Source: Ylistrum balloti (lineage: Eukaryota). From it: a DNA stretch of 64,000 bases. This document shows positions 3,430 through 31,398 of the stretch, one piece after another; the stretch's first letter is position 1, and every line of letters begins with the position of its first letter. A model generated the notes under the pieces. That model saw only the letters and a list, made by a program, of their open reading frames with translations. It ran no database searches and was not told the origin of the DNA. Made by a program: the position numbers and the translations under genes. The stretch lies in the NCBI RefSeq assembly GCF_031769215.1, contig NW_026782036.1, forward strand, positions 1,054,001-1,118,000, read 5' to 3'.

Positions 3430-3758
3430 GTAATTAATGGAAATAACACGGAAAATTTGATGATTAAAACTACAAATATGATTTTAAATTATATTGGTAA
3501 CTGTATGCTTATTTTTGTCCTAATAGATTGTTAAAACAATGCTATTATGTTAGTATCCATACTTATTATGTGTTATATTGTGTTATATCATATGTTATAT
3601 GATATTTTGTTACATAGAAAAAAAATATATATACTCGATCATGAGTGGAGATTGTCATGAACTTATATCGCTTTTAACACGATAACATGAACATCAATAT
3701 TATTTGCCGTGTTTTATTAAGTAAAAGGATGTCAACTTAGCGGCACCATCAAGCTTAC

Positions 3759-6700
3759 TTAGCACCATTAAGACAAGAGATCCAGCCACCATTATAACCG
3801 TCTGTAATGTGTCCGTATACATCACAGCCTTCAATCCTCCTGTAAAATAATAGTAGTTATAGCATCAGGGTATCTTAGGCAAGGGAAACAATGCAAGACC
3901 TTAGACAAACATCAATGTATGACAAAATTGTTTATTAATATAACAACAATATAATTAGTATTATGTTGACTTTATTTCCCTTCTTTGATAAATCATCAAG
4001 AATCTTGTTACCGGGGTAATCAATACTATTGTAATAGTTTAAGATTATTATAATAAACAAGTATATAGATGACGTTGAGTAGTTTGATTTATGTTTTCAG
4101 CAAATGCAACTGACGGCGTTATCAAAAATAAAATCAGAATTCATGCTATTTCCTAGTTCCTAATTAGTGTACATTGCATTTGTAAAGATGTACATTTTTG
4201 TTATGACGACATTGAAATTACTTCACATTGTTTATATGCCGTCGGCACTGGTTGGTTTATTTTCGTAATTTTCGATATGTTGTATCTGTGAAGAGTTGTT
4301 TGTAATGAAAAAGTTATCACTAACATTCAATACCAAACGTAGATGTAATTTTAACATGAACGATCGAACATACCGTAAATCAGCTACAAAACATAAAGTG
4401 AAAAATCCAAGTAATATCAATGTTGATGAAACGGTGTCTTTGGAAAGAAGGAAGTTAACGCCCACGTGTTTACAAGATGTATTGCTTCTCATTGTAATAC
4501 ATCGAGCGGGATACTGATGTACCAACCTGAGACAGTATACAGAGCAGATATTCCTAACAACAGGAAAACTCCCGCGTATAGGTCCCATCCTACAGCCTGC
4601 TGTATGAATATTGTTCCCGCAAACATGTCAACCTAAAGATACAACTGACTAGGCTGGATACAAATGCGACATCAAATGTTCAAGGTCCAAAGAGAATGCA
4701 ACGAATCAAGCAAGCTATTTCTTACATGTTTTGTCTATTACACACAGCTCCGGTTCTGTTTGTTTGCCAAAGGGAAGATATTTTAAAACAGTTTTAACTA
4801 TTCACATTATACTTCAACAATTGGCCAACACGAAAGGTAACATTAACACTTCGTAGTCTATGATAACATAAATCTTTACTCAATCCTTCCCATGTTAACA
4901 CTCAATCCTTCCCATGTTAACACTCAATCCTTCCCATGTTAACACTCAATCCTTCCCATGTTAACACTCAATCCTTCCCATGTTAACACTCAATCCTTCA
5001 CATGTTAACACTCAATCCTTCCCATGTTAACACTCAATCCTTCCCATGTTAACACTCAATCCTTCCCATGTTAACACTCAATCCTTCACATGTTAACACT
5101 CAATCCTTCCCATGTTAACACTCAATCCTTCACATGTTAACACTCAATCCTTCACATGTTAACACTCAATCCTTCACATGTTAACACTCAATCCTTCCCA
5201 TGTTAACACTCAATCCTTCCCATGTTAACACTCAATCCTTCACATGTTAACACTCAATCCTTCCCATGTTAACACTCAATCCTTCACATGTTAACATACA
5301 TGTTTCATGTATTAAATAAAGACGTCTCTTTTATTTGAATACGGGTGATCGTTCATTAGACAATTTTTTAACGAAAAAATATACAGTATGGTTCAAGGTT
5401 CCTTACTTACGGATATTTTAGTGAAGACATATATGAGAAGCGATAATACTGCCATGTAGATCTGGAGACGTTGACCACCAAACCTTCTCATGAGGTACTC
5501 CGGTAAGGTGTATACCTGCAAACAGATATACATATATCTATAAATGGTATCTTTAGCATACAGCATATAAATAATTATCATTTACTTACAGAAATGAAGC
5601 TTTATAACGAGAAACAAAAAGTGCATCTCCCGTTTCTATCAGTGCCACACCTTTGGCAGTCCAATGCATGATCACATAAAGACAATACAACTGTAGAATA
5701 CAACTTAAGTTATCATCTGACATATACTTGCTATTCGAAAAAAAGTGTTTCGTCAGGAAACTTCTAACAGCAATGGTGTCCAGACATACCCCGCTTGAAA
5801 TGTAGATGGGTACAAAAAGCCATCCCAACAGCAGTAGACAGAACAATCCCTACAAATAGACACATATATCAATGGTTCATTTAGTTATTGATTTACTATC
5901 ATGACCTTTCGGCAGATGAAAAAAGGGAAATTAGAAGGAATTAAGTGAAATTGAAAGCAGAGTAGAGAACATGAGAAGAAATGGAGTCGTATATCTCGCC
6001 AGTGAGTACTAACAAAATAAGTTCACAACAAGGCCACTATAATACAGTTATGAATACAAATGACGACCAAATTGGTGACATTTTATTTTATTAAATTAGA
6101 TAGTGTCATGATATTAACACAAAAATTTAAGACTCAAATACAACATTACTTGATATAGATTTCAGTAAACTGTAGTTGTCATCTTAAGGGTACAAGAGCG
6201 GCTACTGCCTAATAGTCTAATCAGGTTGAAAAACATCGCCACAAAGACACTTCTAAATGAAGACAAAATGTCCTTCCCATTCAGAATACAGAAGAGGTTG
6301 AGAAGAGAAATCGGAAAGAGGTGAAGACGTTACTTGAATACCAACTATGTTTTACAAGGTGACCGTTACAATGTATAACTAAGCAGCACAAAATAAACTA
6401 TGACAGTAAACCAGCCTAGTCATTGGATATCGGCTGAAGCAAAATAGTCATCAATGACAAAGTCCTTTTATGTACTCTAATATATGTAAATTCTAGCGTT
6501 ATCTGTTGTTGATACAGTCCTTATAGTAACAAGGTTATGTCACTTACATGGCAACCATAGATTGGTACCTATATAAACATGATCTAAGATAGAAATAGGA
6601 CGCGTGATTTACTAACATATAATTCTTTAGGCGGCGACGAAAGATACAAATGTATATATTTGCTGATAGAACGTATTTACGTAATTACAACACAAACTCA

Positions 6701-8777
6701 AATTTAATCAATAGACATACAGAAGAGGTAATACATGAAAAGCGAGCGAACAAATTAATACAAATTGAGCGAAATATGTGAGGGAGTAAATAAATGTGTG
6801 GTCGAGAATAGCAGATCATGTCAATATACTTAGAATTAAAATATTTCAAGTTTTTTAGGCATAGATTTCAAGAAAAAGATGCAAGGAATTGTGTTACTTA
6901 CATTTAATTCATAACTAGCCACCGCAATTCCGTTTGCCGCTCCTGTTCCAGCAAGACCAACAAAGCTTCCGCTGCCAATGTTACTGGAGAACAGTGATGC
7001 ACCTATCTATAAAGTAACAAAAGTGTACAGTTTTACTGCTTGAACTAGAAACTTATCAATAAATAATCCACCATTATTCATTAATATTAAACACTCTTAT
7101 ATTTACACGTTTTCGCTGAAATAACCGTTTTTAGGTAACCTAGATGTGAATCTATAGCGGTAACTTTCAATAAACATGGCGGTTTTGTTAGATGACAGAC
7201 TTTGATATTTGATAATTACGGATGATTTTCAGTTCAAGATTTCCTAGAATAATTGCATGAAAATGCAAGTAAAATACCGTGTTTGGTTACATTAAGGGTA
7301 TGTTTAATACCAATGTTGAAATGCTATCATTTTGTGTTTGTTTAATCTTTAATGATCATTGAACTGTCCCGGATTTTATTGTAGATACCGATGTTTCCAG
7401 TGGTGTAATTGTCATAGTGTTATTACAAATGTATACACATTGGTATCTTTACAACAGTAGAGCGAGACTACGCAGAACCCAATAAACGTTATAAAAATCA
7501 AATAATTATCGTGTCTTTTATGTCATTTACAAGTGTTTTTTTTTTTATCTATTTGCAACTTTGGGTAAACTGATATAATTGTGCTTAGTTCTTAGTTATT
7601 CTACATTAGGAATTTCCATAATATATTCATTAGATAAAAGATCTGTGTATATTTATGCTGTCAGGACCAAGTGTGTGTTTTTTTTTATAAAGTAAGGACA
7701 GGGAACATTGTGTTTACAGTGTACTACATTTTGTCTTACCGCAAACCACAGCATATCCCTGCCTGCTAGGAAATAACCGCTGACACTGCCTCGCTCTGTT
7801 CTGACGGTTGCCTACACAGGTAATATAAACATACTGAGACTCCAGGGTAATGTCGGATTACACTTCACGAATAGAAATGAGGAATTAAGTAAATAAAGAA
7901 GGCGTGTCAGAACATACTTTGAAATAAATTAACTTTGAATAAATAATTGTGTGAAAGCCAGTGGGTACGCCAGGTAAACAAAATGGTACTGACAAAGTTG
8001 CTAATATTAAAGAGTACTATACATAAATATCTTATTAAAAGAACAATAAGAAAAATCCCATTTCCCAGTTTCTTAGAATATCAAACTCATCAATACGCCA
8101 TTTTTCAAAACTTAAACAATGAAAATTTAAACCGTCGAAATAATCCCTTAATGGATAATTCTGAAATTACGAAAAAAAAAACAAAAAAAACCGAAAACAT
8201 TTATGATATAACGTATCTGATAATACGTTAGATAAATTATTAACAACCAACCAACTTGTTAAGCCATTAGTAATATAGCTTCGTATATTCCTCTACCTAC
8301 ACCTATTTATCAGGTATTGTCTGTGAATATCATTGAGTGAAATAAGTGTAAGTAAAAAAAGAAATATATATAGATGTATGTGCATATAAAATGTTCACCT
8401 TTTTAAACATCTATCTACAGGGCACATATCTATATAAATACCTTCATAACCAGTGACCTATATCAGTTCACAGTGTGACATGAACATTGTATTTTTGCCG
8501 TAGGAAATGTTAGGATAAAATTTTTTTCATTTTTTAAAAACAAAATCAGCCAAATATCCAAAAAGTAACGGAAACAAAAACCAATATTAAGAAGAATAAA
8601 ACAACAAAATTAATTATCATGAGTTAATATACAGAAAATGACAAGAACTTTAAAAGTCTTGAAACTTACCCATATTCCTGTTGCTAGACAGAAGACGAGA
8701 TATATAACGATCACAACGATATCGACGGTACCCAAAGTTGCTGATGAGAAAGCCGAGCCTGTTGCATTAGATGACAT
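3759..8777 (-). CDS. Sodium:glucose/myo-inositol cotransporter (SLC5/SSS family, SGLT-like), 5' part. Coding exons 8670-8777, 7740-7811, 6902-7006, 5790-5849, 5411-5515, 4527-4632, 3759-3839; remaining exons lie beyond the left edge
   Basis: Hand splicing with GT-AG at every junction and consistent phases gives [212 protein letters not shown]. These are hallmark SGLT motifs (GYFLAGR, SNIGSG, PEYL..RFGG, GGL.AV.YTD). Confidence 0.96.
4878..5295. repeat. Minisatellite, 22-bp unit ACTCAATCCTTC(C/A)CATGTTAAC x19, in SLC5 intron 5
   Basis: 418 bp = 19 x 22 bp, with a single C/A variable site. Confidence 0.97.
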
Positions 8778-10590
8778 TGTTGTAATTGCTGTTTTTGTCG
8801 TTGTTGTTGATGATGTTACTACAGCTGTCAGTACCGTGTCGCCATGTTCTTGTTATCTGTCACTGCTGTGACAGTCGCATTCCTCGTATCGTAATAAAGG
8901 TTGTGTTGCTACAGAGTTATCAGTAAGGTCCCGAACGATTTACAATATATCAAAACGAAACATTGTTAATCCGTCCTACGTGAAATATACACAACGGAGG
9001 GCACTAACAGTTGTCGTCTACTTCAGTGGTGTACAGGTAACTGCTGCCTTCCTTTAAGGACGCCACTATTCACATCACGTGTCTATGTACCTAGGATCGT
9101 CCGCCATATAAACCACCAGTGTGTTTACACTAACTCGCCTATTACAAACACACACCATCACATCTTAATTCAGTGATAATATCCGATACATCTTCATCAT
9201 ACCCTTAAATATACTAGAAAGTTTGTCTACTGCTAGGCGCAATCTTTGAAAAGTAAAGGTGTCTAATAACCGCTACTTCCCTTAGATGTACGCTGACGGA
9301 TACGGTGTTAATGTATGGAGCAAAAATAACGAAACCTTGTTATATGGCCTTTCTAAGGGTATGTTCATTTTAGCGTGACGAGAGACTTTGTCGATGACTC
9401 ATTACTTAAGATTTTAATGATATGGTTTTTACAGCATCACATCCCACCTCTCATCGTTTAACTTTGGATCTATTGGTCCCATATTCCTATATACGACTGT
9501 TCAACTAAATCTGGCTCTCTATAGCTCGGTGAAGACTATTGGGTTCTGTTTTCTTCATGGTGATGTATCAGTATACTTTCCCGTTGACTTTGACGTTTGA
9601 TCTGGTCCTTCTTTTAAAAGAATTATAGCATATTTGTCCATTTAAATTACAGCCTATTGGACAGCTCTTTTTTTTTGGAAGGTTGTATATTTTGCTCACT
9701 TTCACACTGATTTATATATTGGCCACGTGTCTTATTTGTCACGTTCTTTCGCATTCTATTTATCTACATGCACTTCTATCTAAAGTTACCCGAGGTGCAA
9801 AATTTGTTTATCTATTTTACTTAAATTTAAGGGCGGTTTGTAAACATACTTGTAGACATCTAATACATTGAAACGTTTACTTACAATCTATACGTTTACC
9901 TGTATATTGCCCTCTGGTTTAAAGTTTGTTTAGCATTTGATTTATACTTCTTAGTATCCCTTTCTAATTCATCCGAATAAAACCAGTTTGCATAACGTCA
10001 TATATAAACGGATTATTAATCTTATTAACATTAATGATATTACTGAATACTAACACGAAACATCAATGATACTGTGATGATACTGCAATTCACTTAAGGA
10101 AGGAGTTGTCAATAGTTTAAATACTGTAATTCATTACAAATTACTTGTCAGTGTCATTTCTTGCATTTTTTCATAGATATCTCGGCTGCAACAATGTTAT
10201 ATTTACTAATGAAGGAAGGTCGCGTTAGAGGAAGCAATTAACTACAATATTTCACGGATTTCGAAGAAAACTGTACCAGAGAGCGGGTAAATCGACTGCA
10301 TGATATGTTGGATTTACTTTCAGAATGAGCTAAACCCATTTGGTTTCTCATTATAAAAATAGAGATTGATATCTAGAATGAAAATAAAACACAATTATTT
10401 TGTCACAATTTTTAATCTTCTATTAACGATTTACAAAATAGATATTTCATTGTGACTGTAGATAAGTCATTAAGTACCTTGATCCTTGACTGCAGATAAA
10501 GATAACGAAGGAAACCCCATTTTTTTTATTTTATTAATTTTTTTCTAAGAAATGCTGCCTTACCATGCCAAATTATAAAAAAAATAAATA

Positions 10591-11700
10591 TTGTCTAGTG
10601 ATGGTAGCCTCCTGTATTTATATCGATCTCCTTGTCTAGTGATGGTAGTCTCCTAAATTTATACTGGACTCCTTGTCTAGTGACGGTAGCCTCCTATATT
10701 TATATTGAACTCCTTGTCTAGTGATGGTAGTCTCCTGTATTTATATTGGACTCCTTGTCTAGTGACGGTAGCCTCCTGTATTTATATCTAACTCCTTGTC
10801 TAGTGATGGTAGCCTCCTGTATTTATATCGAACTCCTTGTCTAGTGATGGTAGTCTCCTGTATTTATATTGGACTCCTTGTCTAGTGACGGTAGCCTCCT
10901 GTATTTATATCTAACTCCTTGTCTAGTGATGGTAGCCTCCTGTATTTATATCGAACTCCTTGTCTAGTGATGGTAGTCTCCTGTATTTATATTGGACTCC
11001 TTGTCTAGTGACGGTAGCCTCCTGTATTTATATCGAACTCCTTGTCTAGTGATGGTAGCCTCTTGTATTTATATCGAAATGCTTGTTTAGTGATGGTAGC
11101 CTCCTGTATTTATATCGAACTCCTTGTCTAGTGATGGTAGCCTCCTGTATTTATATCGAACTCCTTGTCTAGTGATGGTAGCCTCCTGTATTTATATCGA
11201 ACTCCTTGTCTAGTGATGGTAGCCTCCTGTATTTATATCGAACTCCTTGTCTAGTGATGGTAGCCTCCTGTATGTATATTGGACTCCTTGTCTAGTGACG
11301 GTAGCCTCTTGTATTTACCTTGAACTCCTTGTCTAGTGATGGTAGCCTCCTGTATTTATACTGGACTCCTTGTCTAGTGATGGTAGCCTCCTGTATTTAT
11401 ATCGAACTCCTTGTCTAGTGATGGTAGTCTCCTGTATTTATATTGAACTCCTTGTCTAGTGACGGTAGTCTCCTGTATTTATATCGAACTCCTTGTCTAG
11501 TGACGGTAGCCTCCTATATTTATATTGATCTCCTTGTCTAGTGATGGTAGCCTCCTGTATTTATACTGGACTCCTTGTCTAGTGACGGTAGCCTCCTGTA
11601 TTTATATCGAACTCCTTGTCTAGTGATGGTAGCCTCCTGTATTTATATTGAACTCCTTGTCTAGTGATGGTAGTCTATTGTATTTATATTGGACTCCTAG
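10591..11700. repeat. Satellite, 41-bp unit TTGTCTAGTGATGGTAGCCTCCTGTATTTATATCGAACTCC x~27, directly abutting a PLE RT remnant
   Basis: Period 41 read from starts at 10591 and 10632. The last unit continues in frame into PLE RT sequence. Confidence 0.97.
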
Positions 11701-12800
11701 ACTGCTCCAGAATCCCTTTCAACGGTGTTTTTAATTTTCGGTCGTCTTGTTGTTTCACAAAACCTTTTGTCGGATCTTCTTACTATCATTCTTAGTTCTA
11801 TCAAACAAGGGTTACAGTCTTACTATGATTCTGTCTTCTCTAGAAAAAGGAAATAATGACAGATGGCTTTAGAGAACTCGAAAGGGCATATGACCAATAT
11901 TTTAACATCCCCCTCTTCCTTAGAACTTTTGATTTTTAACTCTGTTCACCCCTGTAAACCATTCCAAACTAAAGGAAAACCTCCTTGTTATGCGAGCTTT
12001 CTTTTCCAAGAAGATTAATCTACTAGAGCGTAACTTTTGAAAAGTACGTCAAATCAAACGAAATCTACCAAGGATGGAATAAAAAAGTGATCGGATTTCT
12101 TGTTGACAATCTTTCGTTGAGTTTTGCAGTAAGATCATCAAACAGATTATAAGCCTACCTTTTCTTGACTGACTTGTTTTCGTTTTCAAAGGAGTGTTGA
12201 TTTAACGAGGAGCTGATCAAAAGAGGTTATGAAGACCTTGCGAAGGCACTCAATTTCACTTTTAAATATATTGATGATGCATTGTATATAAATAACAAGA
12301 TATTTTGATGACAATGGTCATCGTTTGTACCCACCAGAATTGGAAATCTAGGACACGACAGACTCTTCTACATCAGTCGTTTATCTTTTCCCACAACGAA
12401 CCCGACAGTGACAACTTTCCAACAAGCTATATGAGAAGCCTGGGGATTTTCAATTTCCATATTGTGATTTTTTCATTTCTAAAAATAACAACGTTCATGC
12501 ACCCACAACCAATAGCATTTACATGTCGCAATTGATTTGATATTTTAAGGCTTTTAGTCCAGTACTATTAATTTCGTGGAAGGTGTCAGCAAGTGTCATA
12601 CAAAGTCATAATACAGGGCTTCGAGAGATTCAGGTTGGTGATAGTTACAGGGGAGTTTTCGGTAGTTGCAGAAACCTCATTGGGAAATTAACTATAGGCT
12701 AAAACTTACATACCGGACGTCATCGATGAAGCATAAGACGCTTTCTCTTCCTGAACACTTGAACTTATTCCTTTTCATGAGTCTCTGAGTATTCTTTCTT
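11660..12800 (+). mobile_element. Decayed Penelope-like retroelement, RT-terminal (Naiad-like) type, 5'-truncated
   Basis: Frameshifted and stop-interrupted translation shows LLYLYWTPRLLQNPF, TKP.SDLLTIILSSIKQGLQSYYD, an FDF.TL-like motif, GFLVDN, LNFTFKYIDDAL (YIDD catalytic motif) and DFQFPYCDF, followed by the conserved 3' tail. No endonuclease follows the RT. The Naiad assignment is from recalled motif similarity. Confidence 0.85.
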
Positions 12801-13329
12801 CTGTTTATTTTAAACGAATTAAGATTATCCACATACCAGGCTTCTAGTATCAGATAAATGTAAACTGTATAATGGATTTATATTGGTTTGGTATAAACGT
12901 TTTGTGAAATGTTATTATGTGTTTAAAAATGCTATTTCATAATGTTTTGTCTTTCGTTCTATTTCAGCCGCTTAATTTGACGGCTCTTAACATAGAAATT
13001 AATAAAAAGAGTGTTAACCACAACCGAATCTGCATGTACTAATGTTAAAGTGTGAAATGGAAATGTCACTGATGTTAAGAACAGGAGATTTCGTCCGACA
13101 TTAGATTATAAATAAGAACTTCACTGAAATTATAATATCTAAGGAAAATCCATCTAATCTTTTATCTCATAATTAAGTAAATAACACCAAGAAGAATGAG
13201 AACAAGTGTTCTGGTTAATATACATTTTCTTATTCAAAATGTTAAAATTCCAATTTGTTTTTAAGTTGACATGCTGGGTTACTTCAAATATATAAAGACA
13301 AAAAAGAATTAAAGCAAATGCTTTGAGTT

Positions 13330-14616
13330 CTAATCAGCTTTAATAAGGTGGCCAGTGAATGATGGGAAGTACTGCCCGCGGATATAGTCACCACTTGACG
13401 ATCTATGGCGAACCCATACATCACTACCGATGTTTAAGTGCACATTGGAAGCACAGGTTCCCATAGCGTTGTATGTCTGGGACGCCCGGGCCCGACAGAG
13501 CAATGTACCGTCACGAACAAGCTCAATTTCAATGTAGTGTGTTTGATAAGACATAATAGTGACGACGAAATGATAGTATCCAGCCACTGGAGCCATGAAA
13601 CGGCCAATGAACGGGTCGTATCCTCCGCCTACTTTTGTGATGACATTGTCGAAGATGATGACTTCGTTGGAAGCTATTGGCGTCATGTCACTGTAAATAG
13701 TTGCTGCGAATGCCACGAAAGGAGTAGTGGCTCTTGTCTCTGTAATACATAGAATCTGTACATAGACTTGAATATTCCATATTTTAATTTCATACATATG
13801 GGCGAGATATATATATACGAGTCTGCAGCAAATATTGAAAGCCAGTGTAACATAAGGGTAAAACGAAAGGCAGTTGCATGCGGTAAATAGCCATCAAAAA
13901 TCATTATAAATTTATAGGTGTTAAAATTGTAGCTTGAGCACAATTCTGTGGACGACAGAGGTGTTAGGATATATGAGGTCTGCAGTTTACATTTTCATAA
14001 ATATTATAAATATGATAAATGTCTTATATTTATTCAACGAAAAACGAAGCTAATTTGCAATAATATAAAGTTTGTTCTGAAGCATGTAATCCGAACATGG
14101 TTACACCTTTTACTTGATAAATGTGGGATACACTCGTTATAACATAATGTAGATTGAAGTACGCATGATAAAACGGGTTAAAGTGTCTAGTAACAGGATT
14201 TTACTTCTTCTGAACACGGTTTCTATCAGTCGGAACTTTTGAAATATTAACCGTATTCTAGGTTCATATCAATATGTATTAAACGAAATGCATTGTTTGA
14301 CAAATATATCTGTATTTCTTGTCATATATTGTATATTATTGAATTGTAGAATTTCACATCATAGAAACATTCATTTATCGCAACATATTAACAAATGATT
14401 AAATACATTACCACGAAACCTTCCTACATCTGTGTGAGACGAGTTGTCTCCCTGAGAACATGGACATTGCGCCTTGATCTCATTCAGCTCTGCAGTAACC
14501 TTCTCCAGCTGAGCTTCAAGTTTGCTAAGTCGATCTTCATTTGAAAGTCTACCAAAGACACTTGTCAACGTAACCAGTACAATTAAAACCTTAACACAAA
14601 GACTATAAGTTGCCAT
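13330..14616 (-). CDS. C1q-domain-containing secreted protein A (signal peptide + coiled coil + gC1q). Exons 14412-14616 and 13330-13739
   Basis: Exon 1 MATYSLCVKVLIVLVTLTSVFG..DRLSKLEAQLEKVTAELNEIK; phase-1 donor G|GTAATG and acceptor TACAG|AG. Exon 2 has VAFAATI, IIFDNVITKVGGGYDPFIGRFMAPVAGYYHF, SDVWV and PSFTGHLI, the gC1q signature. Confidence 0.95.
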
Positions 14617-14794
14617 GTCTCCCTGCTGTCAACAAAGTTCTCAGTGAAGTTACATCAAGCACTAATGAGTCGAGCAGGTGACGCTGACACCACGGCCTCG
14701 ATCTGAAGTAGGCGTATGCAGAGATAAGGTTTAAGTCTGGACTAAACCAGAGGTCAATATACATATGTGTTACATTTCAATAATACCTATCAAC
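14617..14794. promoter_or_regulatory. Putative bidirectional promoter between C1qDC A and B, with AGATAAG (14722-14728) and AGGTCA (14751-14756)
   Basis: Only 178 nt separate the divergent ATGs. The block CCTCGATCTGAA..AGATAAGGTT.AAGTC.GGAC.AAACC.GAGGTCAATAT is conserved in the duplicate at 19730-19800. Confidence 0.7.
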
Positions 14795-15687
14795 ATGGCT
14801 TCCTATACAGCGATTTGGTGCTGTGTCGCAGTTTTAGTGGTAGTAGGAGTAAACTGTATGGAAAATGAAGAAAACTTAATTAGAGAGAGAATAGAAAAGT
14901 TGGAAGCATTAAATGATAATCTCAAACAACAACTTAATGGTCAAAAAATCGTTTATAATGATCTTCTAAATGAGTTGGCAACGTCATCGGATTTTACAGT
15001 AAGGGACAATGATCATCAAAAGAGACAGTCATTGAGTAAGTACATCTTCTTTTTTTTTTTTTTTTTTACTTATCTTTTGTTTACCATCTGCATGGAAAAT
15101 AGGATATAACATCGATAATAATGATCAACAATAATGATGATCAGTTGATAATGATAAACTGCATAAAAGCTTGCTTTTCAGAGATTCAGGGGGGGGGAGG
15201 GGTGGTTCTTGTTTTTGGCTTCCATTTTTAATATCTTCAAATATATCAACTGTGTTTGAATTTCCAAATTTGTTTTTCATTTTATTCGACAGCATGTGAT
15301 GGTCCTGTGGTGTTCCATGCCAGACTTCAGAATTCCATTTACCCTATTGGAACCAATCAGATTATTGCCTATGAAGACGTTGTCACCAATGTTGGTAATG
15401 GGTATGATTCATTTACTGGTCTCTTCCGGGCGCCAGTAGGGGGAGCTTACGAATTCGTCGCTACCATGTGGTCGTCCGACGGCAATTATCTGGAATTTGA
15501 AATGGTTCGAAATGGTGTGGACTTGTGCTACGGAAGGGCTAGTCAATCAAACCAGACCATGGGAACGTGTGTTAGTATGGTGGAATTGTCAGCTGGAGAC
15601 AGGGTATGGGTCAGGCATCTCAGTGGCAGGGGTACCTATGCCAACGGTGCGGACTATCCATCTTTCGTTGGTCATCTTATCGTATAA
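14795..15687 (+). CDS. C1q-domain-containing secreted protein B. Exons 14795-15035 and 15293-15687
   Basis: Exon 1 MASYTAIWCCVAVLVVVGVNC..ERIEKLEALNDNLKQQL..QKRQSL; donor A|GTAAGT and acceptor CGACAG|CA. Exon 2 has VVFHARL, YEDVVTNVGNGYDSFTGLFRAPVGGAYEF, GDRVWV and PSFVGHLI. Confidence 0.95.
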
Positions 15688-16309
15688 ATTATTTACGTAA
15701 ACAAAATAAACAAACTGTCTTTCCACTTATTGTTCTATAATTTGTTGGTAGTGTAAATGAAAGCGATATTAAAAGTGTTGAAAAAATGAAATAGCAAGAC
15801 GATATATCTGTAATTATTGATCAGCATTGTATGTTCATCATTTTGATAATCAAGACTGTCATAGTTTATTTTCTGTTTAAACATATATCCTTTTATGTAA
15901 GTGTGATGGCCACAAAGATAAATGAAGAGTTAATGAAATTAATTCCAATGCTGTATAGGAACCAACCAACATGAATCAAAGCATGTGTTATTCACCGAAA
16001 ATAACTTCTCATCCATGGCGCTACATAGGTAGCAGGAAACAGTCAATTTGCATTTTTTTTCTGAAATCATTGGTCATGTTTGAGGTATACAGGTATAGCA
16101 GTTTGGTTATGAAAATACATCCTTACATGACTGATTTCTGTGATTGCCATGGTTACCATCTCTAAAAATGCTACAAATGAAAAAATACTGCTAATTTCAA
16201 CCTAACACCACAACTTTATAGAAGAAATTTATTTCTGTAGACCTGTTTTAAAATCAAGAACAATGGGGTAACCTAATGAACAAATATATCACCTTTGGCC
16301 ACACCGAGA

Positions 16310-16450
16310 AACAGTGTACTGCTTCCATAGTATTATTCTCGTTGCACTGTTTCCGAGATTCACCTTTAAGTCTTTCTTTTGTGCATATTTTGCCATAGTT
16401 TCATCGACTTTTAGTTCGAATTCAGAACAATACTGATGTTTCCAGTAATG
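16310..16450 (+). mobile_element. Highly decayed 3'-tail fragment of the Naiad-like PLE
   Basis: Partial match (TTTCC.AGATTCA..TTTGT.CATATTTTGC.TAG..GA.TTT.AGTT.G.ATT) to the tails at 18690-18780 and 38450-38540. Confidence 0.45.
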
Positions 16451-18464
16451 GTACTCAGATGATATATACAAATATCTCTTGAACACTAGGAGACGGTTTT
16501 TCTAAACTCACCAGTATCACACTCATAACTCGTGTTTCGTTAGAAAAAAAACGACGCAGAGTACCTCAAACTCGCTGTCGTATAAGAGTACTTTTAGTAC
16601 TAAACTGCCTCGTTACAGTTTGAAAGCTGAGTGTACACTTTCGTCCATTCGCCGTATTATGAGCGGTCGTCAAGGCTCGCTTGCTGTTGGATTAAGAACT
16701 GCTTGACTAATTATTGTCGCTGATCCTAATGATCCTGATACAACATGTAAGATGTCGCTGAGGTTGGCTAGGTTATCGTGTGTAAATAACCATTCAGGGA
16801 ATCCTTTTGGCACCAAAGACACCACCAAGATGGAAATCCATCCTATAGTCTTAAATCGGACACAATATGTTTAGAAAAAGACGTTTTGATCAGATGGTTT
16901 AACATTTCTTTCAGCCCGAAGTTCAAAACGTGTAAAAGAAATTCAACAATGTTTCATATATTTACTTACATTTCTTAGCATTTGGTTAATTTTGATATTT
17001 CTATTCAATGAAAGGCAGTTTTGATGATGTATTTGCCAATTCCAGGCAAATTAGTAGAAAGCAGTATTATTTTGAATAACCTATGCATAAACGGAATGCT
17101 TTTCTGAAAGTTGGTGAGGAAATGACATTAGAAAAGTATTTCTTTACCTTTATTTTCTAAATTGTGTTAACAACATTTAAACATAAAGTTCAAATTTAAA
17201 GATCATTTTAATTTGAGTATATATTTACAATAATGATTGAGAATAATTGTATCGATCTTGATAATTACCATCTACTAACAACCAAAATAAGAGGGAGTTT
17301 TACCACAATCGTTATATAACAGATACAGAAAGATTGTTTCCTTAACGTTTATGTGTATCGACCTTACGATTTGTTTTTGAAAAATCTTAAAATCATATAG
17401 GTATCCGACACTGAAAATGGACTTTGGTAACAGGCTCAAATATTCTGAGCAGTCGCCTATTCACGATCAGCTATCTACTGCTTTTGTATATTAATTCCAA
17501 GAAATATCAGAAATGCTAGAAATATACCTGGAAGAATAGTTGTTTGTTGTTGAATTACTTCACACTCGCTTCACGTCCTATGCGAATTGCATTATAAGCA
17601 TGCCTTAGCTTAGAAGTGAGATTCCCGATATCAAATGCTTTCGATTAATTACTATTGTTGATTCACTTGAATCATTTTACTATTTTTACTCAGTACCTGC
17701 CCGTTTATGGAAACGTTAAAGAGTGTTGTCAATTTTATTTTCATAATAAATTAAATTTCCTTCATAGATGTATGTGATTTTAATTTCATTTCACCTCATA
17801 TTTATTTTCGGAGAACTTTCACAAATAATGAGTATCATTACAAGCAAGGATAAAGTTCTTGAGATTTGCCACAAACCTGCATGCTTATTTTGCGTTGTTT
17901 TAAAAATCAATTAGCAGAAATAGGTCATTTACTTTAAAACAATGTAAAGCAGTTGGATGTTAAAACTCAGATATGCTATTGATCATAACGGAAGTACAGC
18001 TTACATTCTGTTTATCAATATTTAAGGCGAATTTCGATTTTTACAATTTACAGATATTTCCACACTTTTGATTACCCTGTACAATCACTGATGGATTTTA
18101 GCTGACTAAGAACACATGGATAACGCATTCATATTTATTGACGTGGTACATGCACTCCATTTAACATTTCTTACATTTTTGAAAATGTCTTTTATATTCG
18201 CATGTTTTTTCTAGTATATCTAGATAATCCGGTCATACCAAGGATTTCAATTAGTGAAACCCAAACTGACCTGAGTTTCTATCTAATCTAACTTATGTTT
18301 ACAAACAGAAGTGCTAAAATATGATGAAAGTGATATTTTACAAGGACGGAAAAATAAGACTAGATGTATTTGTATATCGAGCTTATCGCTGGCCATTCAG
18401 GTGATATACAATTTACAGAAAATGCCTAGTAATAACCTTCATGAAAAGGTTGATAAAAATTAAA

Positions 18465-18790
18465 GGGAAGTTTTATGGTCGCCATAGTAATCTCATTGAG
18501 AAATATTTTATTTCTTTGTGTGACAAGAAGCTGGATGCTTGTTAGTTTGTTCCGTTGTTGTATACCTTGTTCTCAATTGAGAACGTGACATTACTAACTT
18601 GGATTGACCAATCTTAACATTGCGGGTGACGTCGATGGAGCAGAAGACGCTTATTCTTCCTGAATACCTGGAATCATTCACCTGTACTTTTTCAGGAGTC
18701 TCCGTGTAAATCTGTCTTTTGTACATATTTTGCCTTAGTGTTATGGAATTTGAATTTGAATTATGAAAATGTTGCCATGTTGGTATTTTC
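18465..18790 (+). mobile_element. 5'-truncated 3' end of Naiad-like PLE
   Basis: Begins with KFYGRHSNLIEKY-coding sequence, then the conserved tail GCGGGTGACGTCGATGGAGCAGAAGACGCTTATTCTTCCTGAATACCTGG. Confidence 0.8.
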
Positions 18791-18848
18791 CTTCACCAGA
18801 TATGATCATTAAGTCCAAAAAAAATTACGAAAACAAACTAATGAAGGT

Positions 18849-19654
18849 TTAATCAGCCTTTATAAGATGACCAGTGAAGGACGGGAAGTATTGCCCGTGA
18901 ACATAGTCACCACTTGAAGACTTATGGCGGACCCATACATCACTACCAACTCTCAGGTACACATTGGAAGAACATGCACCCATACCGTTGTATGTCTGGG
19001 ACGCCCGAGCCCGACAGAGCAGTGTACCATCACGAACAAGCTCAATTTCAATGTAGTGTGTTTGATAAGACAAAATAGTGACGACGAAATGATAGTATCC
19101 GGCCACTGGAGTCTGAAAACGGCCAATGAACGGGTCGTATCCTCCACCTACTTGTGTAATGACGTTGTCGAAGATGATGACCTCGTTGGAAGCTATTGGT
19201 GTCATGTCTCTGTAGATAGTTGCTGCGAATGCCACGAAAGGAGTAGTGGCTCTTGTCTCTGTAATATGAAATTGATATAAAGACTTTTTGTTAACTATGT
19301 AATCATCGGCAGGAAACTTGCTTGTAAAGATAAATACAAATTTATCTTTGATTTTGCATACACTTGTACATTTACAATAGTTGGTTATTGAACTTTGTTG
19401 TGTTCGCAATCTTATCAAAAGCATTGACGATGATATGTGAACAAAAGTTTGAATATATTACCGTAGAACTTTCCCTCGCCTGTATATGAAGAGTTGAGAT
19501 ACCATGGACATTGCGTCTTTATCTCCTTCAACTCTGTAGTAACCTTCTCAAGCTGGGCTTCAAGTTTGCTCAACCGATCTTCATTTGATCTACCAAAGGC
19601 GATAGACACTGTTACCAATAAAAGGATAGTAAGACAAAGACTAAAATTCAGCAT
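18849..19654 (-). CDS. C1q-domain-containing secreted protein A' (paralog of A). Exons 19462-19654 and 18849-19258
   Basis: Same exon phases as A and the same exon-2 length (410 nt). MLNFSLCLTILLLVTVSIAFGRSNEDRLSKLEAQLEKV.., intact gC1q domain. Confidence 0.95.
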
Positions 19655-19829
19655 GTTACCCTACTGTCTTGTCTACAGAGCTGTAAGTAAACTTTTTTGG
19701 AGTTCCAAGTACTCCATACTTAAAACATGACCTCGATCTGAAATAGAGGTTTGTAGACAAAGATAAGGTTCAAGTCAGGACAAAACCTGAGGTCAATATA
19801 TGTTTTTGTGTCAATGATATTAATCAAAC
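19655..19829. promoter_or_regulatory. Duplicate bidirectional promoter between A' and B', with AGATAAG (19761-19767) and AGGTCA (19790-19795)
   Basis: 175 nt between the divergent ATGs. Motif block is conserved with 14695-14760. Confidence 0.7.
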
Positions 19830-20799
19830 ATGGCTTCCAAGACAGCAGCATGGTGTTTGGCCGCCCTTTTAACAACAGTAGTGGGGAACTGGAAAGAAAA
19901 TGAGGAATACGTTATAAGAGAAAGAATAGAAAAGTTGGAAGCATTAAATGATAATCTCAAACAACAACTTAATGGTCAAAAAATCATTTATAATGATCTT
20001 CTAAATGAGTTGGCAACGTCATCAGATTTTACAGTAAGAGGCAATGATCATCAAAGGAGACAGGCATTGAGTAAGTAGGCCTTGTCTCAATTTCACTTAA
20101 AATTTGACTGTTGATTTATCGTATGATGTATGTTTAGATATATATTAAATGAAACCTGAATACTACAATGGTTTCATATTCTGATGCTTTGTTATGCCAT
20201 TACACTAAAACGGGTTTAAAAAGTCATGCATTTTAAAAATACATCTTTGAAAACGCTGATTTGATTTGCGAGTATAACCTTTTGGCACAGTTATGTAAAA
20301 TACAGCAAAGCCACACAATGAATTAAACTGCATCATACTGTCATTATTTTTAACCTATGAAACAACTTATTTTTAACAGAATTCCTTTTTATTTTATTCG
20401 ACAGCATGTGATGGTCCTGTGGTGTTCCATGCCAGACTTCAGAATTCCATTTACCCTATTGGAACCAATCAGATTATAGCCTATGAAGACGTTATCACCA
20501 ATGTTGGTAATGGGTATGATTCATTTACTGGTCTCTTCCGGGCGCCAGTAGGAGGTGCTTACGAATTCATCGCTACCATGTGGTCGTCCGACGGCAATTA
20601 TCTGGAATTTGAAATGGTTCGAAATGGTGTGGACTTGTGCTACGGAAGGGCTAGTCAATCAAACCAGACCATGGGAACGTGTGTTAGTATGGTGGAATTG
20701 TCAGCTGGAGACAGGGTATGGGTCAGGCATCTCAGTGGCAAAGGTGCCTATGCCAATGGTGCGGACTATCCATCTTTCGTTGGTCATCTTATCGTGTAG
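19830..20799 (+). CDS. C1q-domain-containing secreted protein B' (paralog of B). Exons 19830-20070 and 20405-20799
   Basis: Exon lengths 241 and 395 nt are identical to B. Donor A|GTAAGT, acceptor CGACAG|CA. gC1q domain nearly identical to B. Confidence 0.95.
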
Positions 20800-21309
20800 A
20801 TTGTTTACGTAAATAAAATAAACTATTTCTCTGTATTGTTCTGAATTTTGTTGTCCGTGTAAATGCATGTGATTTTAAATATGAAAATCTTAACAAAGCA
20901 GTATCAATAGTTTTCATTTACATACAATCTACCTGTAAATATATTTGACGTTTACTGTTGATAATCAAGGCTGTCATAGTTTATTTTATTTTAAACACAT
21001 ATCCTGGTATGAAGATATGAATGATACATCATGAAAACCTAATTATTGCACATCCTTGGTCATAAAAGAACGTTTTTGTGTGGTTTAAAGACGTCCCTGA
21101 CCCGCCTCTGTTCAACTATCCCCTTCGCTCGATTTTTGGATTGCACTTTCCATATAATCCATCAGATTCCCATAAAGCATGCGAAGAAAAATACAACATG
21201 TTTTGTTACTTTGTCACATATATTATATAATCTTCGCTCAGTACAAAAGTTTTCTTACGACTCCTCAGTGATTCCGACGGCCTATATAGTTAAACCTAGG
21301 AGACGACGA

Positions 21310-27815: not shown

Positions 27816-28484
27816 TTTACATTAATGTACATAAAGCGGTATTAACAGTAACAGACTTTTATATGGATTTAAATAACAGTAACGTATCAACGTGTCAGTT
27901 AATTAACGTTTTGCCATTTTTTACCTCTAAATGAATTATAGGACGTCACGCAAATAAGCCATTTCTGTTTTACACAGAAAAAAAAATCATTAAACATCCT
28001 TATTTTATGTAGATTAACACAAAAAATATCTCGAGTAGCATTTCATATTCTCAAGACTCAATCTATATTTTCCAGTAGGATCCAAACAAATTATACAATG
28101 ACGTAATCACCAAAGTGGGTAAAGCATTTGTCAAGTTCGCAGTGATATTCTAGGCTCTCACGAGAGGAATTTACGTATTCATAGCAACCATGTGAACCCG
28201 CGAATACTCCCATAGGGGCCGCCAGATGTTTTATAACTGACGTACACTAATGAAAAGCTGGCACTCCCAACAAAACAATATTGGTTGGCGTCAGTGTTCT
28301 TAAGACGTTGTTAAGAGATCAGGTATGGTTATAAAACCGCGGCTTCGGATCCGTTTACATAAATGGACGTATTTTCTGGTCATTTCATAATTTGATTTTA
28401 AAAGTTGGTATTAACATATTTCAATGAATTTATTTCAATATTCAGTAATTTATTTCTTTAATTTGTTTTTGTTTTCATACAAGG

Positions 28485-29836: not shown

Positions 29837-31398
29837 ATGGAACCGTTTAAAATAACAGCATGGTGCTTTGTAGTAATATCATTTTGTGGTCATAATGTGT
29901 TCGCAAATCACAATGATCCTATAGCTACTTTAGAATATCTGGAATACTGTTTTGATTCTATGGAGAGGGACCTTCTGGAGATTGGGGAGTACATAGAGGT
30001 CATTTCCCATGCATACACGGAAGTATTTCACAGTAAAATGAAAGGTCAACGTGAAGGTAGATAATATTCTAGCACTTTTGCAAAATGTGTCAAATCTTTT
30101 GTAATTTTATTGCTATATGTACTTATAGGTTTCAAAACAAATTAATGTTGTTCATCAGTTAGCTTATACAACGAAAATGTCTTTACGAAGACATAATTGA
30201 GTTTGACATTATCGAAAAATACATATTATTATTAATAACCTATAAAGTCATCGTGCTTTTATTTATTTTAGAGATTTCTACAAACTCGTTGTTTTGTGTT
30301 TTACAATAAATAAATATCCATTGATTTACAGATAAAAGAAACAAAATTCTAACGAATGAAGACTATTCACAAACAAAAGAGCGTAATGGACGTGTGCCCG
30401 CCAATGTCAACGTTTCAATATTGTTTTCTCCAACAATGCGAACCCCGACAACTACAGCAACACCGACCAATCCTCTGACAACGATATCATCAACACCGAC
30501 AACTACACAAATAACAAATACAAAGACAACAATAACTACAACACCAACAACGACAACTACAATACTATCAACTGCAACAACACCGACTACATCTACAACA
30601 AGACCAATTACAGATACAACAACACCAACTACAACTACAACACCAACTACAACAACAACACCAAGTACAACAACAACTACAACAACACAAACTACAACGC
30701 CAACTACAACAACACCAACTACAACAACAACTACAACAACAACACCAACTACAACAACACCAACTACAACAACTTCAACAAAAACAACTACAACACCAAC
30801 TACAACAACAACACCAACTACAACTACAACACCACCTACAACAACACCAACTACCTCAACAACCCCAACTACAACAACAACACCAACAACAACAACACCA
30901 ACTACCACAACAACACCGACTACAACAACAACACCAACAACAACTACAACACCAACTACTACCACATTACCCACTACCACTGAACGCATCATCCCACCGG
31001 TTGTGTTCCAAGCGTCGCTTACAAATGTATATCCTATAATGAGTTCCAAACAGGTTATAGTGTTCGACCGGGTGATCACCAATGTCGGTCACGCATACGA
31101 CAGTAATTTTGGACTGTTCAAGGTACCGTACAATGGTGTATACGAATTCATAGTGACTGTGGCTGCAGCTAAAAACCACTTTGTAGATGTGATGTTGGTG
31201 CAGAATGCTGCCATCCTTTGTAAGGCTCATGCAGCATTATCTGATCAGGGTATTGGCATTTGTGTGGCAATTGTGCATGCTACAAAAGATGATGATATAT
31301 TTGTTCGTCACTTCAATGGGAAAGGGTCACATTTGACTGGACAGAATGGCTATTCGCCCTTTTCAGGACATTTGATCAGTGCAGATGTTATCAACTAA
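29837..31398 (+). CDS. Mucin-stalked C1q-domain protein C (signal peptide, helical segment, ~185-aa Thr/Pro-rich region, gC1q). Exons 29837-30056 and 30332-31398
   Basis: Exon 1 MEPFKITAWCFVVISFCGHNVFA..; phase-1 donor G|GTAGAT and acceptor TTTACAG|AT keep frame into ORF 30394-31398. That ORF has (PTTTT)n, then VVFQASL, VFDRVITNVGHAYDSNFGLFKVPYNGVYEF and SPFSGHLI. Confidence 0.92.
30430..30985 (+). repeat. Coding ACA/ACT-rich tandem repeat encoding the PTTTT mucin-like stalk
   Basis: Imperfect ACACCAACTACAACA units, frame preserved throughout. Confidence 0.9.

What the first reader, a model, noticed from the sequence alone, without database searches (positions are those of the whole stretch)
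13330..20799. Tandemly duplicated head-to-head pair of dissimilar C1qDC genes: candidate co-regulated heteromeric recognition module
Two divergent gC1q genes (A type and B type) are transcribed back-to-back with only 178 nt between ATGs. The whole A<->B cassette is repeated about 5 kb away (A'<->B', 175 nt) with all four ORFs intact. gC1q domains are obligate trimers and vertebrate C1q is an A/B/C heterotrimer. Collagen IV partner chains are encoded by head-to-head pairs. By analogy (inference), A and B may be stoichiometric partners, and two cassettes would allow combinatorial heads. Both carry coiled coils and linker cysteines (A: QCPC, A': QCP; B/B': TCDGP) outside the two gC1q cysteines, which could form inter-chain disulfides.
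Basis: partly seen in the sequence, partly recalled or inferred. Interest (0 to 1): 0.7.

Follow-up and report, generated by a model that had tools for sequence, protein, structure and literature searches.

The report
Conserved back-to-back C1q gene pair
Two different secreted C1q-type genes sit back-to-back on one short shared control region in this scallop and the pair has been copied once; the same pair exists in other scallops and in pearl oysters, so a working partnership between the two proteins is plausible but unproven.

Summary
Confirmed and extended. In this scallop (Ylistrum balloti) window, two different two-exon genes for secreted coiled-coil + gC1q proteins (A, B; heads 50% identical) are transcribed back-to-back, with 178 nt between ATGs. 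The unit is repeated 5 kb on (A', B'; 175 nt). All frames and splice sites are intact.

The unit is old. Single A<->B pairs with 176-188 nt gaps occur in Pecten, Mizuhopecten and Argopecten. A-clade/B-clade pairs with 92-114 nt gaps occur in Pinctada and a relative. Oysters hold the genes in tandem.

The heads are under strong purifying selection (dN/dS 0.015-0.17, dS mostly saturated). The spacer aligns between genera (z 13-40) where introns and 3' flanks do not, and it has an invariant AGATAAGG.

The duplication is Ylistrum-specific (dS 0.35). B/B' exons were homogenised (dS 0.07). A' evolves faster and lost one linker cysteine.

A conserved two-gene unit with a constrained shared spacer is well supported; co-regulation is inferred from it. 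Mixed A/B assembly is untested (no RNA runs, no multimer modelling); I put it near 0.3. 'Combinatorial heads' is weakened because B and B' are almost the same protein.

The parts
13330..13740 (-). Gene A exon 2: last 2 bases of the split codon, gC1q head and stop codon
   Evidence: Pfam C1q E 2.7e-17 over profile 1-127/127. Acceptor ...attacag|AG read. Equals P0001 residues 69-204.
13741..14411 (-). Gene A intron (671 nt, phase 1)
   Evidence: GT..AG read. Only about 63% identity to the 202-nt A' intron, with 469 gap columns (boundaries there approximate).
14412..14616 (-). Gene A exon 1 coding part: hydrophobic N-terminus, helix 26-50, then QCPC and a low-confidence linker
   Evidence: AlphaFold model: helices 4-20 and 26-50, residues 51-73 pLDDT <50. 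C-x-C is conserved in four scallop genera.
14617..14794 (.). Shared 178-nt spacer between the two ATGs: candidate bidirectional promoter plus both 5' UTRs. Conserved blocks are CAGGTGAC, CACCACGGCCTCGATCTG, AGATAAGG and GGTCAAT.TACATATGTGT.
   Evidence: Five-cassette alignment. Between-genus alignment z 13-40 against z below 4 for intron and 3' flank controls. AGATAA lies 59-75 nt from the B ATG in all seven spacers.
14795..15035 (+). Gene B exon 1 coding part: hydrophobic N-terminus and long helix (to residue 63)
   Evidence: Model helix 2-63 (low confidence).
15036..15292 (+). Gene B intron (257 nt, phase 1, with a poly-T run)
   Evidence: GTAAGT..cag read. About 50% identity to the B' intron.
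15293..15687 (+). Gene B exon 2: T-C-D-G-P, gC1q head and stop codon
   Evidence: Pfam C1q E 5e-19. Equals P0008.
18849..19259 (-). Gene A' exon 2 (gC1q head)
   Evidence: Pfam C1q E 3.9e-17. 89.7% aa identity to A. dS 0.354 and dN/dS 0.15 against A.
19462..19654 (-). Gene A' exon 1 coding part: QCPW (second cysteine lost) and a 2-residue shorter linker
   Evidence: P0002. Donor G|GTAATA read.
19655..19829 (.). Second spacer (175 nt). It keeps AGATAAGG and the B-proximal blocks. The CAGGTGAC..CACCACGG block is degraded.
   Evidence: Weaker alignment to other genera than cassette 1 (z 4-16 against 16-36).
19830..20070 (+). Gene B' exon 1 coding part
   Evidence: The signal-peptide part is strongly diverged from B and the coil part nearly identical.
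20405..20799 (+). Gene B' exon 2 (gC1q head)
   Evidence: Pfam C1q E 3e-19. Acceptor read. 96.9% aa and 97.4% nt identity to B, dS 0.071.
3740..8770 (-). Exons of a sodium:solute symporter (SSF) gene, downstream neighbour of A. This is a synteny anchor, not part of the unit.
   Evidence: tblastx against the SSF genes that follow gene A in Argopecten and Pecten.

Best explanation
The locus holds an ancient two-gene unit. An A-type and a B-type gene are transcribed in opposite directions from one spacer of about 180 bp. Each encodes a secreted protein with a signal peptide, an alpha-helical coiled-coil stalk, a short cysteine-bearing linker and a gC1q head. The spacer is itself conserved.

Shown here:
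- The unit predates the split of scallops (Pectinida) and pearl oysters (Pterioida).
- Both heads evolve under strong purifying selection.
- The spacer is conserved between genera where neutral DNA is not.
- In the Ylistrum lineage the whole unit was copied once in tandem. Afterwards the B/B' exons were kept nearly identical, most simply by exon-limited gene conversion. A' drifted about five times faster than A, lost one linker cysteine and lost one conserved spacer block.

Inferred:
- The spacer is a shared bidirectional promoter, with a candidate GATA-factor site at AGATAAGG. It delivers both chains to the same secretory cells at the same time.
- The products are trimeric, lectin-like recognition proteins, as described for other bivalve C1qDC proteins.

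It is open whether the two chains co-assemble (mixed trimers, or disulfide-linked A3/B3 assemblies) or act as two co-secreted homotrimers. I put co-assembly near 0.3.
For: Gene models and C1q heads. Fold: (jelly roll; best matches are trimeric gC1q heads of C1QL, CTRP5, adiponectin, C1q and Cbln).

Conservation of the pair:
- Pecten maximus, ATG gap 182 nt; Mizuhopecten yessoensis, 188 nt; Argopecten irradians, 176 nt.
- Pinctada imbricata, 92 nt.
- Unidentified Pinctada relative L007, 114 nt, although the B-like intron has grown to about 6 kb.
- The same SSF neighbour follows A in Pecten, Argopecten and the window.

Phylogeny: A-clade 98/97, A- and B-superclades 100/99 each. AU tests reject an independent local origin of the pair in pteriids (p 5e-5) and in scallops (p 4e-10).

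Selection: between genera dS is 0.66 to above 2. dN/dS is 0.04-0.17 for A and 0.015-0.047 for B.

Spacer: between-genus alignment scores lie 13-40 sd above shuffles, while 180-nt intron and 3' flank controls lie at -2 to +4. AGATAAGG is invariant in five scallop cassettes, and AGATAA on the other strand sits at a similar distance in both pteriid spacers.

Duplication history: A/A' dS 0.354 against B/B' dS 0.071 (27/96 against 6/89 synonymous differences, Fisher p 2e-4). Introns are 50-63% identical. A' branch 0.089 against A 0.018.

General knowledge: head-to-head pairs 100-400 bp apart tend to be conserved and transcriptionally correlated (PMC1487180).
Against: - There is no expression evidence. 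The only public run holding the locus is DNA, so co-expression and the transcription start sites are unknown.
- A conserved 180-nt spacer could equally be two abutting independent promoters plus two 5' UTRs.
- Head-to-head partners can be expressed differently, as reported for COL4A5/COL4A6 (abstract of PMC2120565, listed).
- Within the B-superclade, the orthology of the pteriid partner to scallop B is unresolved (polytomy).
- With long-branch rows included, the A-clade had only 80/42 support.
- Oysters keep both gene types but in tandem, so tight divergent linkage can be given up.
- The GATA motif is not significantly enriched in any single scallop spacer (p 0.08-0.49).
- Signal peptides and coiled coils are inferred from sequence and single-chain models (B model mean pLDDT 61).
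Confidence: 0.65

Rival explanations
1. A and B are regular partners in one hetero-oligomer. The assembly could be mixed A/B trimers held by the coiled coils and heads, or A3 and B3 trimers cross-linked through the linker cysteines. The bidirectional promoter would exist to keep the chains in proportion, as in collagen IV pairs.
For: - The pair and its spacer have been conserved across two bivalve orders.
- The scallop genes are 1:1 orthologues under unusually strong purifying selection for this family.
- The distance from the end of the helix to the first head strand is similar in both chains: 27 residues in A and 23 in B. The stalks could therefore run in register.
- Both chains carry unpaired-looking linker cysteines that are conserved in orthologues.
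- Head identity of 50% is, to my knowledge (not checked here), within the range of C1q-family paralogues known to mix. Cbln1/Cbln3 is one such pair (PMC9829651); CTRP combinations are from my own knowledge.
Against: - Nothing tested here addresses physical association.
- The helices differ in length: about 25 residues in A and about 36 or more in B.
- The cysteines lie at different distances from the head.
- A C-x-C at the coil end fits a self-closing homotrimer (inference).
- A' lost one of the two cysteines yet stays under purifying selection (dN/dS 0.15).
- Oysters separated the divergent layout.
Confidence: 0.3
2. The linkage is passive. An old inverted duplication happened to leave two paralogues 180 bp apart. 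The layout persists because so short a spacer offers almost no room for a harmless breakpoint. The two genes are otherwise independent recognition proteins, and the Ylistrum copy is one more segmental duplication in an expanding family.
For: - C1qDC families grow by local duplication (PMC6835236).
- The window holds seven C1qDC genes in all orientations.
- Mya arenaria also shows tandem head-to-head pairs of dissimilar C1qDC genes.
- Oysters rearranged the genes without losing them.
Against: - The spacer is conserved block by block between genera whose synonymous sites are saturated, unlike introns and flanks. It is therefore functional DNA, not a mere gap.
- Both genes are retained 1:1 with dN/dS 0.015-0.17. 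This is unlike the fast turnover and episodic positive selection described for the family in oysters (PMC6835236).
- In L007 a 6-kb intron expansion left the 114-nt spacer intact.
Confidence: 0.2
3. The second cassette is an assembly artefact: two haplotypes, or a collapsed or expanded repeat, placed in tandem.
For: - Bivalve genomes are highly heterozygous.
- One contig of run X1 joins B' exon 1 to a B-like exon 2 (record 2).
Against: - The cassettes differ by dS 0.35 in A, have unalignable introns of different length (671 against 202 nt), and are separated by 2.9 kb of unique and repeated DNA.
- Contigs of a separate DNA run cover both spacers and the DNA between the cassettes at even depth of about 10.
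- NCBI annotates separate proteins for A and A'.
Confidence: 0.02

Closest known systems
Bivalve C1qDC gene clusters (secreted coiled-coil 'C1q-like type II' proteins; Gerdol, Greco & Pallavicini 2019, PMC6835236)
   Same: - Same protein architecture: signal peptide, coiled coil instead of collagen, one gC1q head.
- Same clustered, locally duplicated genes.
- The same presumed lectin-like recognition role.
   Different: - The oyster clusters are described as mostly same-strand tandem copies with ongoing turnover and episodic positive selection.
- Here two old paralogues (about 50% identical) form a fixed divergent pair with a conserved 92-188 nt spacer.
- The scallop genes are 1:1 orthologues with dN/dS of 0.015-0.17.
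- No paper found in three searches links C1qDC genes with a head-to-head or bidirectional layout.
Collagen IV head-to-head pairs (COL4A1/A2, A3/A4, A5/A6) with bidirectional promoters
   Same: - Two paralogous chains of a trimer-forming secreted protein are encoded divergently from a very short shared promoter.
- The pair was duplicated as a unit.
- The linkage is conserved over long times (PMC1487180).
   Different: - For collagen IV the chains are known to enter the same heterotrimer. Here association is untested.
- There is no collagen sequence here.
- COL4A5/A6 also show that such pairs can be differentially expressed (PMC2120565).
Vertebrate complement C1q (C1QA-C1QC-C1QB cluster, A/B/C heterotrimer)
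   Same: - gC1q heads (best sequence match of A in the PDB is the C1q A/C/B single-chain head, E 2e-20).
- Clustered paralogous chains.
- Cysteines in the stalk region.
   Different: - Vertebrate chains have collagen stalks and, to my knowledge, lie in the same orientation.
- Here there are two chain types, coiled-coil stalks and a divergent layout.
- The NCBI names ('C1q subunit A-like', 'cerebellin-3-like', 'C1q-related factor-like') are best-hit labels, not orthology.
Cerebellin and CTRP hetero-oligomers (e.g. Cbln1/Cbln3)
   Same: - Non-collagen or short-stalk gC1q proteins in which paralogues of moderate identity mix.
- N-terminal cysteines join trimers into hexamers (PMC9829651; structures listed).
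   Different: - To my knowledge those partner genes are not linked head-to-head.
- There is no evidence of orthology to A or B.

Membership tests
gC1q domain proteins (C1q/TNF superfamily, Pfam PF00386) | Full-length match to the C1q domain profile above the curated cut-off | tested here: met
   All four heads, and three further genes of the window, score 63-70 bits against a cut-off of 23.7 and cover profile positions 1-2 to 127 of 127.
gC1q domain proteins (C1q/TNF superfamily, Pfam PF00386) | Ten-strand jelly-roll fold like solved gC1q heads | tested here: met
   The model of A has strands over residues 78-203, with most 10-residue blocks of the head at pLDDT 84-94. Foldseek top 50 are all gC1q heads, E down to 7e-11, TM (target) 0.72-0.83. 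The B model has the same strand order but low confidence.
gC1q domain proteins (C1q/TNF superfamily, Pfam PF00386) | Assembly of the heads into trimers | not testable with these tools
No multimer prediction was possible.
Bivalve secreted coiled-coil C1qDC ('C1q-like type II') | N-terminal signal peptide | tested here: inconclusive
   Hydrophobic N-termini of about 20 residues in A, A', B, B' and all orthologues. They are modelled as a helix. No signal-peptide predictor was on hand.
Bivalve secreted coiled-coil C1qDC ('C1q-like type II') | Alpha-helical coiled-coil stalk in place of a collagen Gly-X-Y stalk | tested here: met
   No Gly-X-Y repeats in any of the four proteins. Predicted helix 26-50 in A, with hydrophobic residues at 3-4 spacing (L30, L33, L37, V40, L44, I47), and a helix to residue 63 in B. 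Oligomeric state was not tested.
Head-to-head (bidirectional) gene pair with shared promoter, collagen IV type | Divergent orientation with starts less than 1 kb apart | tested here: met
   ATG-to-ATG gaps are 178 and 175 nt. Transcription start sites are not mapped, so the true promoter distance is at most this.
Head-to-head (bidirectional) gene pair with shared promoter, collagen IV type | Linkage and spacer conserved in evolution | tested here: met
   Four scallop genera, Pinctada and a relative. Spacer z 13-40 against controls below 4. Not conserved in oysters, where the genes lie in tandem.
Head-to-head (bidirectional) gene pair with shared promoter, collagen IV type | Correlated transcription of the two genes | not testable with these tools
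   No RNA run holds the locus. The single holder is DNA kept as contigs.
Head-to-head (bidirectional) gene pair with shared promoter, collagen IV type | The two products enter the same protomer | not tested
   Needs multimer modelling or biochemistry.
Vertebrate-type complement C1q | Collagen-like stalk that binds the C1r/C1s proteases | tested here: not met
   No collagen repeats; the stalk is a predicted helix. The genes are not filed as C1q orthologues.

The most novel reading that the evidence does not exclude
A and B are obligate partner chains of one heteromeric C1q-type complex. Its stoichiometry would be set by a bidirectional promoter kept since before scallops and pearl oysters split. 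This would be an invertebrate, coiled-coil counterpart of the vertebrate C1q A/B/C heterotrimer, encoded in the collagen IV manner. It would have a conserved, non-diversifying function, since its 1:1 orthology and low dN/dS set it apart from the fast-evolving immune C1qDC repertoire.
Probability: 0.3. Interest if true: 0.7.

Novelty: new variant of a known kind. Interest (0 to 1): 0.5.

Why it matters
Bivalves carry hundreds of C1qDC genes. These are usually treated as interchangeable, fast-evolving, single-chain lectins. To my knowledge no native invertebrate C1qDC has been shown to be a heteromer, and the 2023 review read here notes that no invertebrate C1qDC crystal structure exists and that few have been isolated in native form (PMC10672478).

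A pair that is fixed back-to-back on a conserved 180-bp spacer in two orders, under strong purifying selection, gives a concrete and small test case: two cDNAs and one short promoter. It addresses two open questions: whether invertebrate C1q proteins form defined mixed assemblies, and how members of these huge families are co-regulated. It also separates an old, conserved core of the family from the lineage-specific expansions.

If A and B turn out to be independent homotrimers, the locus is still a clean example of a conserved bidirectional promoter in a mollusc.

Tried and rejected
- **Expression.** Laying it confirmed the layout but cannot speak to expression.
- **Multimer modelling.** Models of A3, B3, A2B and AB2 were not possible. 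The structure tool takes single natural chains, and I did not build fusion constructs.
- **Spliced models.** Joined spliced models were not sent to any search. Exons were searched by reference, and the database's own full-length proteins (P0001, P0002, P0008), which equal my splice models, were used for alignments and folds.
- **The search for related loci.** Not used, because its collections are viral contigs, metagenomes and bacterial or archaeal genomes, not molluscs.
- **Mya arenaria.** Two tandem head-to-head pairs were found. The minus-strand partners are only 22-28% identical to A/B and sit on a very long branch. I do not count them as the same unit.
- **GATA motif.** Enrichment per spacer is significant only in Pinctada (p 0.004) and not in any scallop spacer. 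The case for the site rests on invariance and position, not on counts.
- **Repeat-mediated duplication.** A repeat fragment at 16343-16422 resembles 18683-18762, but no copy lies outside the cassettes. Unequal crossing-over between flanking repeats is not supported.
- **Characterised scallop C1qDC.** I could not establish whether A or B equals CfC1qDC or AiC1qDC; the paper gives only an accession.
- **Literature.** Searches for a described head-to-head or bidirectional C1qDC pair found nothing relevant.

Full report
**What is there**

The window has no N and 30-41% G+C. Protein matches identify it as Ylistrum balloti, a scallop.

Between 13330 and 20799 lie four two-exon genes. My splice models use phase-1 introns with these donors and acceptors:
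- A: donor G|GTAATG.
- A': donor G|GTAATA.
- B and B': donor A|GTAAGT.
- All four: acceptors ending in cag.

The models reproduce the NCBI proteins exactly: P0001 (A, 204 aa), P0002 (A', 200 aa) and P0008 (B, 211 aa; its 90% cluster has two members).

A and A' are on the minus strand, B and B' on the plus strand. There are 178 and 175 bases strictly between the start codons.

Every second exon is a complete gC1q domain by Pfam. The model of A has a signal-like helix, a helix at 26-50, a low-confidence linker at 51-73 that carries C51-P-C53, and a jelly roll at 78-203. Its best structural matches are all solved trimeric gC1q heads. The B model is weaker but has the same plan: a helix to residue 63, a linker with C82, then the head. 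The A and B heads are 49.6% identical.

**The duplication**

The two cassettes align only over exons, spacer and short flanks (13292-15897 against 18808-21011). Identity by part is as follows (feature limits were a few bases off my final splice sites):

| Part | Identity |
|---|---|
| A exon 2 | 89% |
| A exon 1 | 77% |
| Spacer | 70% |
| B exon 1 | 85% |
| B exon 2 | 97% |
| Introns | 50-63%, with different lengths |

A/A' exon 2 has dS 0.354 and dN/dS 0.15. B/B' exon 2 has dS 0.071. That is 27 of 96 against 6 of 89 synonymous differences, Fisher p 2e-4.

The B signal-peptide codons are as diverged as A, while the coil codons and exon 2 are nearly identical. One duplication cannot have two ages. 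The B exons were therefore homogenised after the duplication, most simply by gene conversion confined to the parts that selection had kept similar. This is an inference.

A contig of DNA run X1 joins B' exon 1 and intron to a B-type exon 2 and 3' flank. It would fit ongoing exchange, but it may be an assembly path switch, so I leave it unexplained. The same run's contigs span both spacers and the DNA between the cassettes at even depth. This argues against an assembly artefact.

**The pair is old**

Looking up the A orthologues in other genomes shows a single A<->B pair in three scallop genera:
- Pecten maximus, ATG gap 182 nt.
- Mizuhopecten yessoensis, ATG gap 188 nt.
- Argopecten irradians, ATG gap 176 nt.

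A sodium:solute symporter gene follows A in Pecten and Argopecten, as it does in the window at about 8770-3740. Cassette 1 therefore sits in the ancestral position, and cassette 2 is the Ylistrum-lineage addition. Its dS of 0.35 compares with 1.0-1.3 to Pecten and Mizuhopecten.

Outside scallops:
- Pinctada imbricata has a B-type gene (minus) and an A-type gene (plus) whose first exons start 92 nt apart.
- An unidentified relative of Pinctada (ENA contig, L007) has the same pair 114 nt apart, although the B-type intron there is about 6 kb.
- In two Saccostrea species, and in Logan contigs with the same layout, the A orthologue lies in tandem behind a B-type gene. Another A-superclade gene faces that B-type gene at 1.3-2.7 kb.

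A maximum-likelihood tree of 26 heads splits into an A-superclade and a B-superclade, each at 100/99. The A-clade proper has 98/97 support and holds scallop A, the pteriid plus-strand genes and oyster A. I left out three Mya rows, the window gene at 36 kb and Pinctada 3057, all on long branches.

AU tests reject trees in which the pteriid pair (p 5e-5) or the scallop pair (p 4e-10) arose by local duplication. With the long rows included, the A-clade had only 80/42 support. Inside the B-superclade the relation of the pteriid partner to scallop B is a polytomy. 'Same ancestral pair' is therefore the simplest reading, not a proven one.

Pectinida and Pterioida are different orders. To my knowledge their split is Palaeozoic; I did not test this.

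**Selection on genes and spacer**

Between scallop genera, synonymous sites are saturated or nearly so (dS 0.66 to above 2). The heads nevertheless differ by only 7-13% in protein. dN/dS is 0.04-0.17 for A and 0.015-0.047 for B. This differs from the turnover and episodic positive selection reported for oyster C1qDC clusters, which are also described as mostly same-strand (PMC6835236).

The spacer aligns between genera at 69-80% identity, 13-40 standard deviations above shuffled sequence. Pairs that involve cassette 2 score lower: z 13-16 to Pecten and Mizuhopecten and 4.4 to Argopecten. Equal lengths of B intron, B 3' flank and A 3' flank score like shuffles, at -2 to +4.

The conserved blocks are CAGGTGAC, CACCACGGCCTCGATCTG, an invariant AGATAAGG 67-75 nt before the B start codon, and GGTCAAT.TACATATGTGT. 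Both pteriid spacers carry AGATAA on the other strand, 59-68 nt from the B-type start. Counts of GATA motifs are not significant in single scallop spacers, so the site is a candidate only.

Cassette 2 has lost the CAGGTGAC/CACCACGG block and aligns less well to other genera. A' has a fivefold longer branch than A, has lost the second cysteine of the C-x-C, and has a shorter linker.

**How it most likely works**

- Shown: a two-gene unit with a constrained common spacer, retained across two orders and duplicated as a unit in Ylistrum.
- Inferred: the spacer acts as a bidirectional promoter, so both chains are made in the same cells. Head-to-head pairs 100-400 bp apart are typically conserved and correlated in expression (PMC1487180), but exceptions such as COL4A5/A6 exist (PMC2120565).
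- Inferred from family knowledge: the products are secreted trimers with lectin-like recognition functions, as reported for scallop CfC1qDC (PMC3419688).

Co-assembly is open.
- For it: the long co-retention, the strong constraint, similar helix-to-head distances (27 and 23 residues), conserved linker cysteines, and the fact that C1q-family paralogues such as Cbln1/Cbln3 do mix (PMC9829651).
- Against it: the helices differ in length, the cysteines lie at different positions, a C-x-C at a coil end would suit a closed homotrimer, and oysters gave up the divergent layout.

I put co-assembly at about 0.3 and two co-secreted homotrimers at about 0.4-0.45. The remainder goes to passive linkage.

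B and B' differ at 4 of 130 head residues and are being kept alike, so diversity comes only from A against A' (14 of 136).

**Comparison and novelty**

The proteins are ordinary members of the bivalve coiled-coil C1qDC class and are already annotated. What I could not find described is the fixed divergent A/B pair with a conserved spacer. No paper found in three full-text searches links C1qDC genes with a head-to-head or bidirectional layout.

The layout resembles collagen IV gene pairs. The chemistry resembles cerebellin/CTRP-type short-stalk C1q proteins. It is not a vertebrate C1q orthologue, because it has no collagen stalk. I rate it a new variant of a known kind, of moderate interest. 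It makes the long-open question of heteromeric invertebrate C1q proteins directly testable with two cDNAs and a 178-bp promoter.

**Limits**

- There are no RNA data and no multimer modelling.
- Paralogue sampling is limited to the fetched loci.
- Transcription start sites are unknown.
- Signal peptides and coiled coils are inferred.
- The read-laying run used 6000 letters, as required.
- Earlier scan notes did not cover this locus.

Noticed in passing
window 29837-30064 and 30394-31398 (+): A C1qDC gene whose second exon encodes about 200 residues of Thr/Pro-rich, mucin-like repeats fused in frame to a complete gC1q head. This is a mucin-stalk variant, unlike the coiled-coil neighbours.
   Followed up: partly
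window 31882-32169 + 32678-33163 (+); 37279-36944 + 36051-35638 (-); 28094-28276: Two further coiled-coil C1qDC genes and a weak C1q fragment, so the window holds at least seven C1qDC genes. The gene at 33 kb groups with the one at 31 kb and with an oyster gene that faces a B-type gene.
   Followed up: partly
window 15274-16056 and 19923-20299 (run X1, record 2): One contig of a public DNA run joins B' exon 1 and intron to a cassette-1-type B exon 2 and 3' flank. It is either a recombinant or converted haplotype, or an assembly path switch.
   Followed up: no
window 15900-16500 and 18300-18900: Highly repeated DNA lies just outside both cassettes, with summed contig depth in the thousands against about 10 elsewhere. 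A short fragment at 16343-16422 resembles 18683-18762.
   Followed up: no
window 10591-11698: Tandem array with self-matches at multiples of about 41 nt and 90-94% identity.
   Followed up: no
window about 3740-8770 (-): Exons of a sodium:solute symporter gene. It is the conserved downstream neighbour of gene A in Pecten and Argopecten.
   Followed up: partly
L008 (Mya arenaria) 2160-3008(-)/3498-4928(+) and 8685-9536(-)/10001-12990(+): Two tandem head-to-head pairs of dissimilar C1qDC genes with gaps of about 490 nt, in a distant clam. The plus-strand genes are weakly A-like (42%) and also carry a C-x-C. The partners are very divergent. Duplication of divergent C1qDC pairs as units may be more general.
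   Followed up: partly
L001 (Pecten maximus) 10193-17069: The intron of the Pecten A orthologue is about 6.9 kb, against 0.2-0.9 kb in the other scallops. In L007 the B-type intron is about 6 kb. Introns expanded while the spacers stayed short.
   Followed up: no
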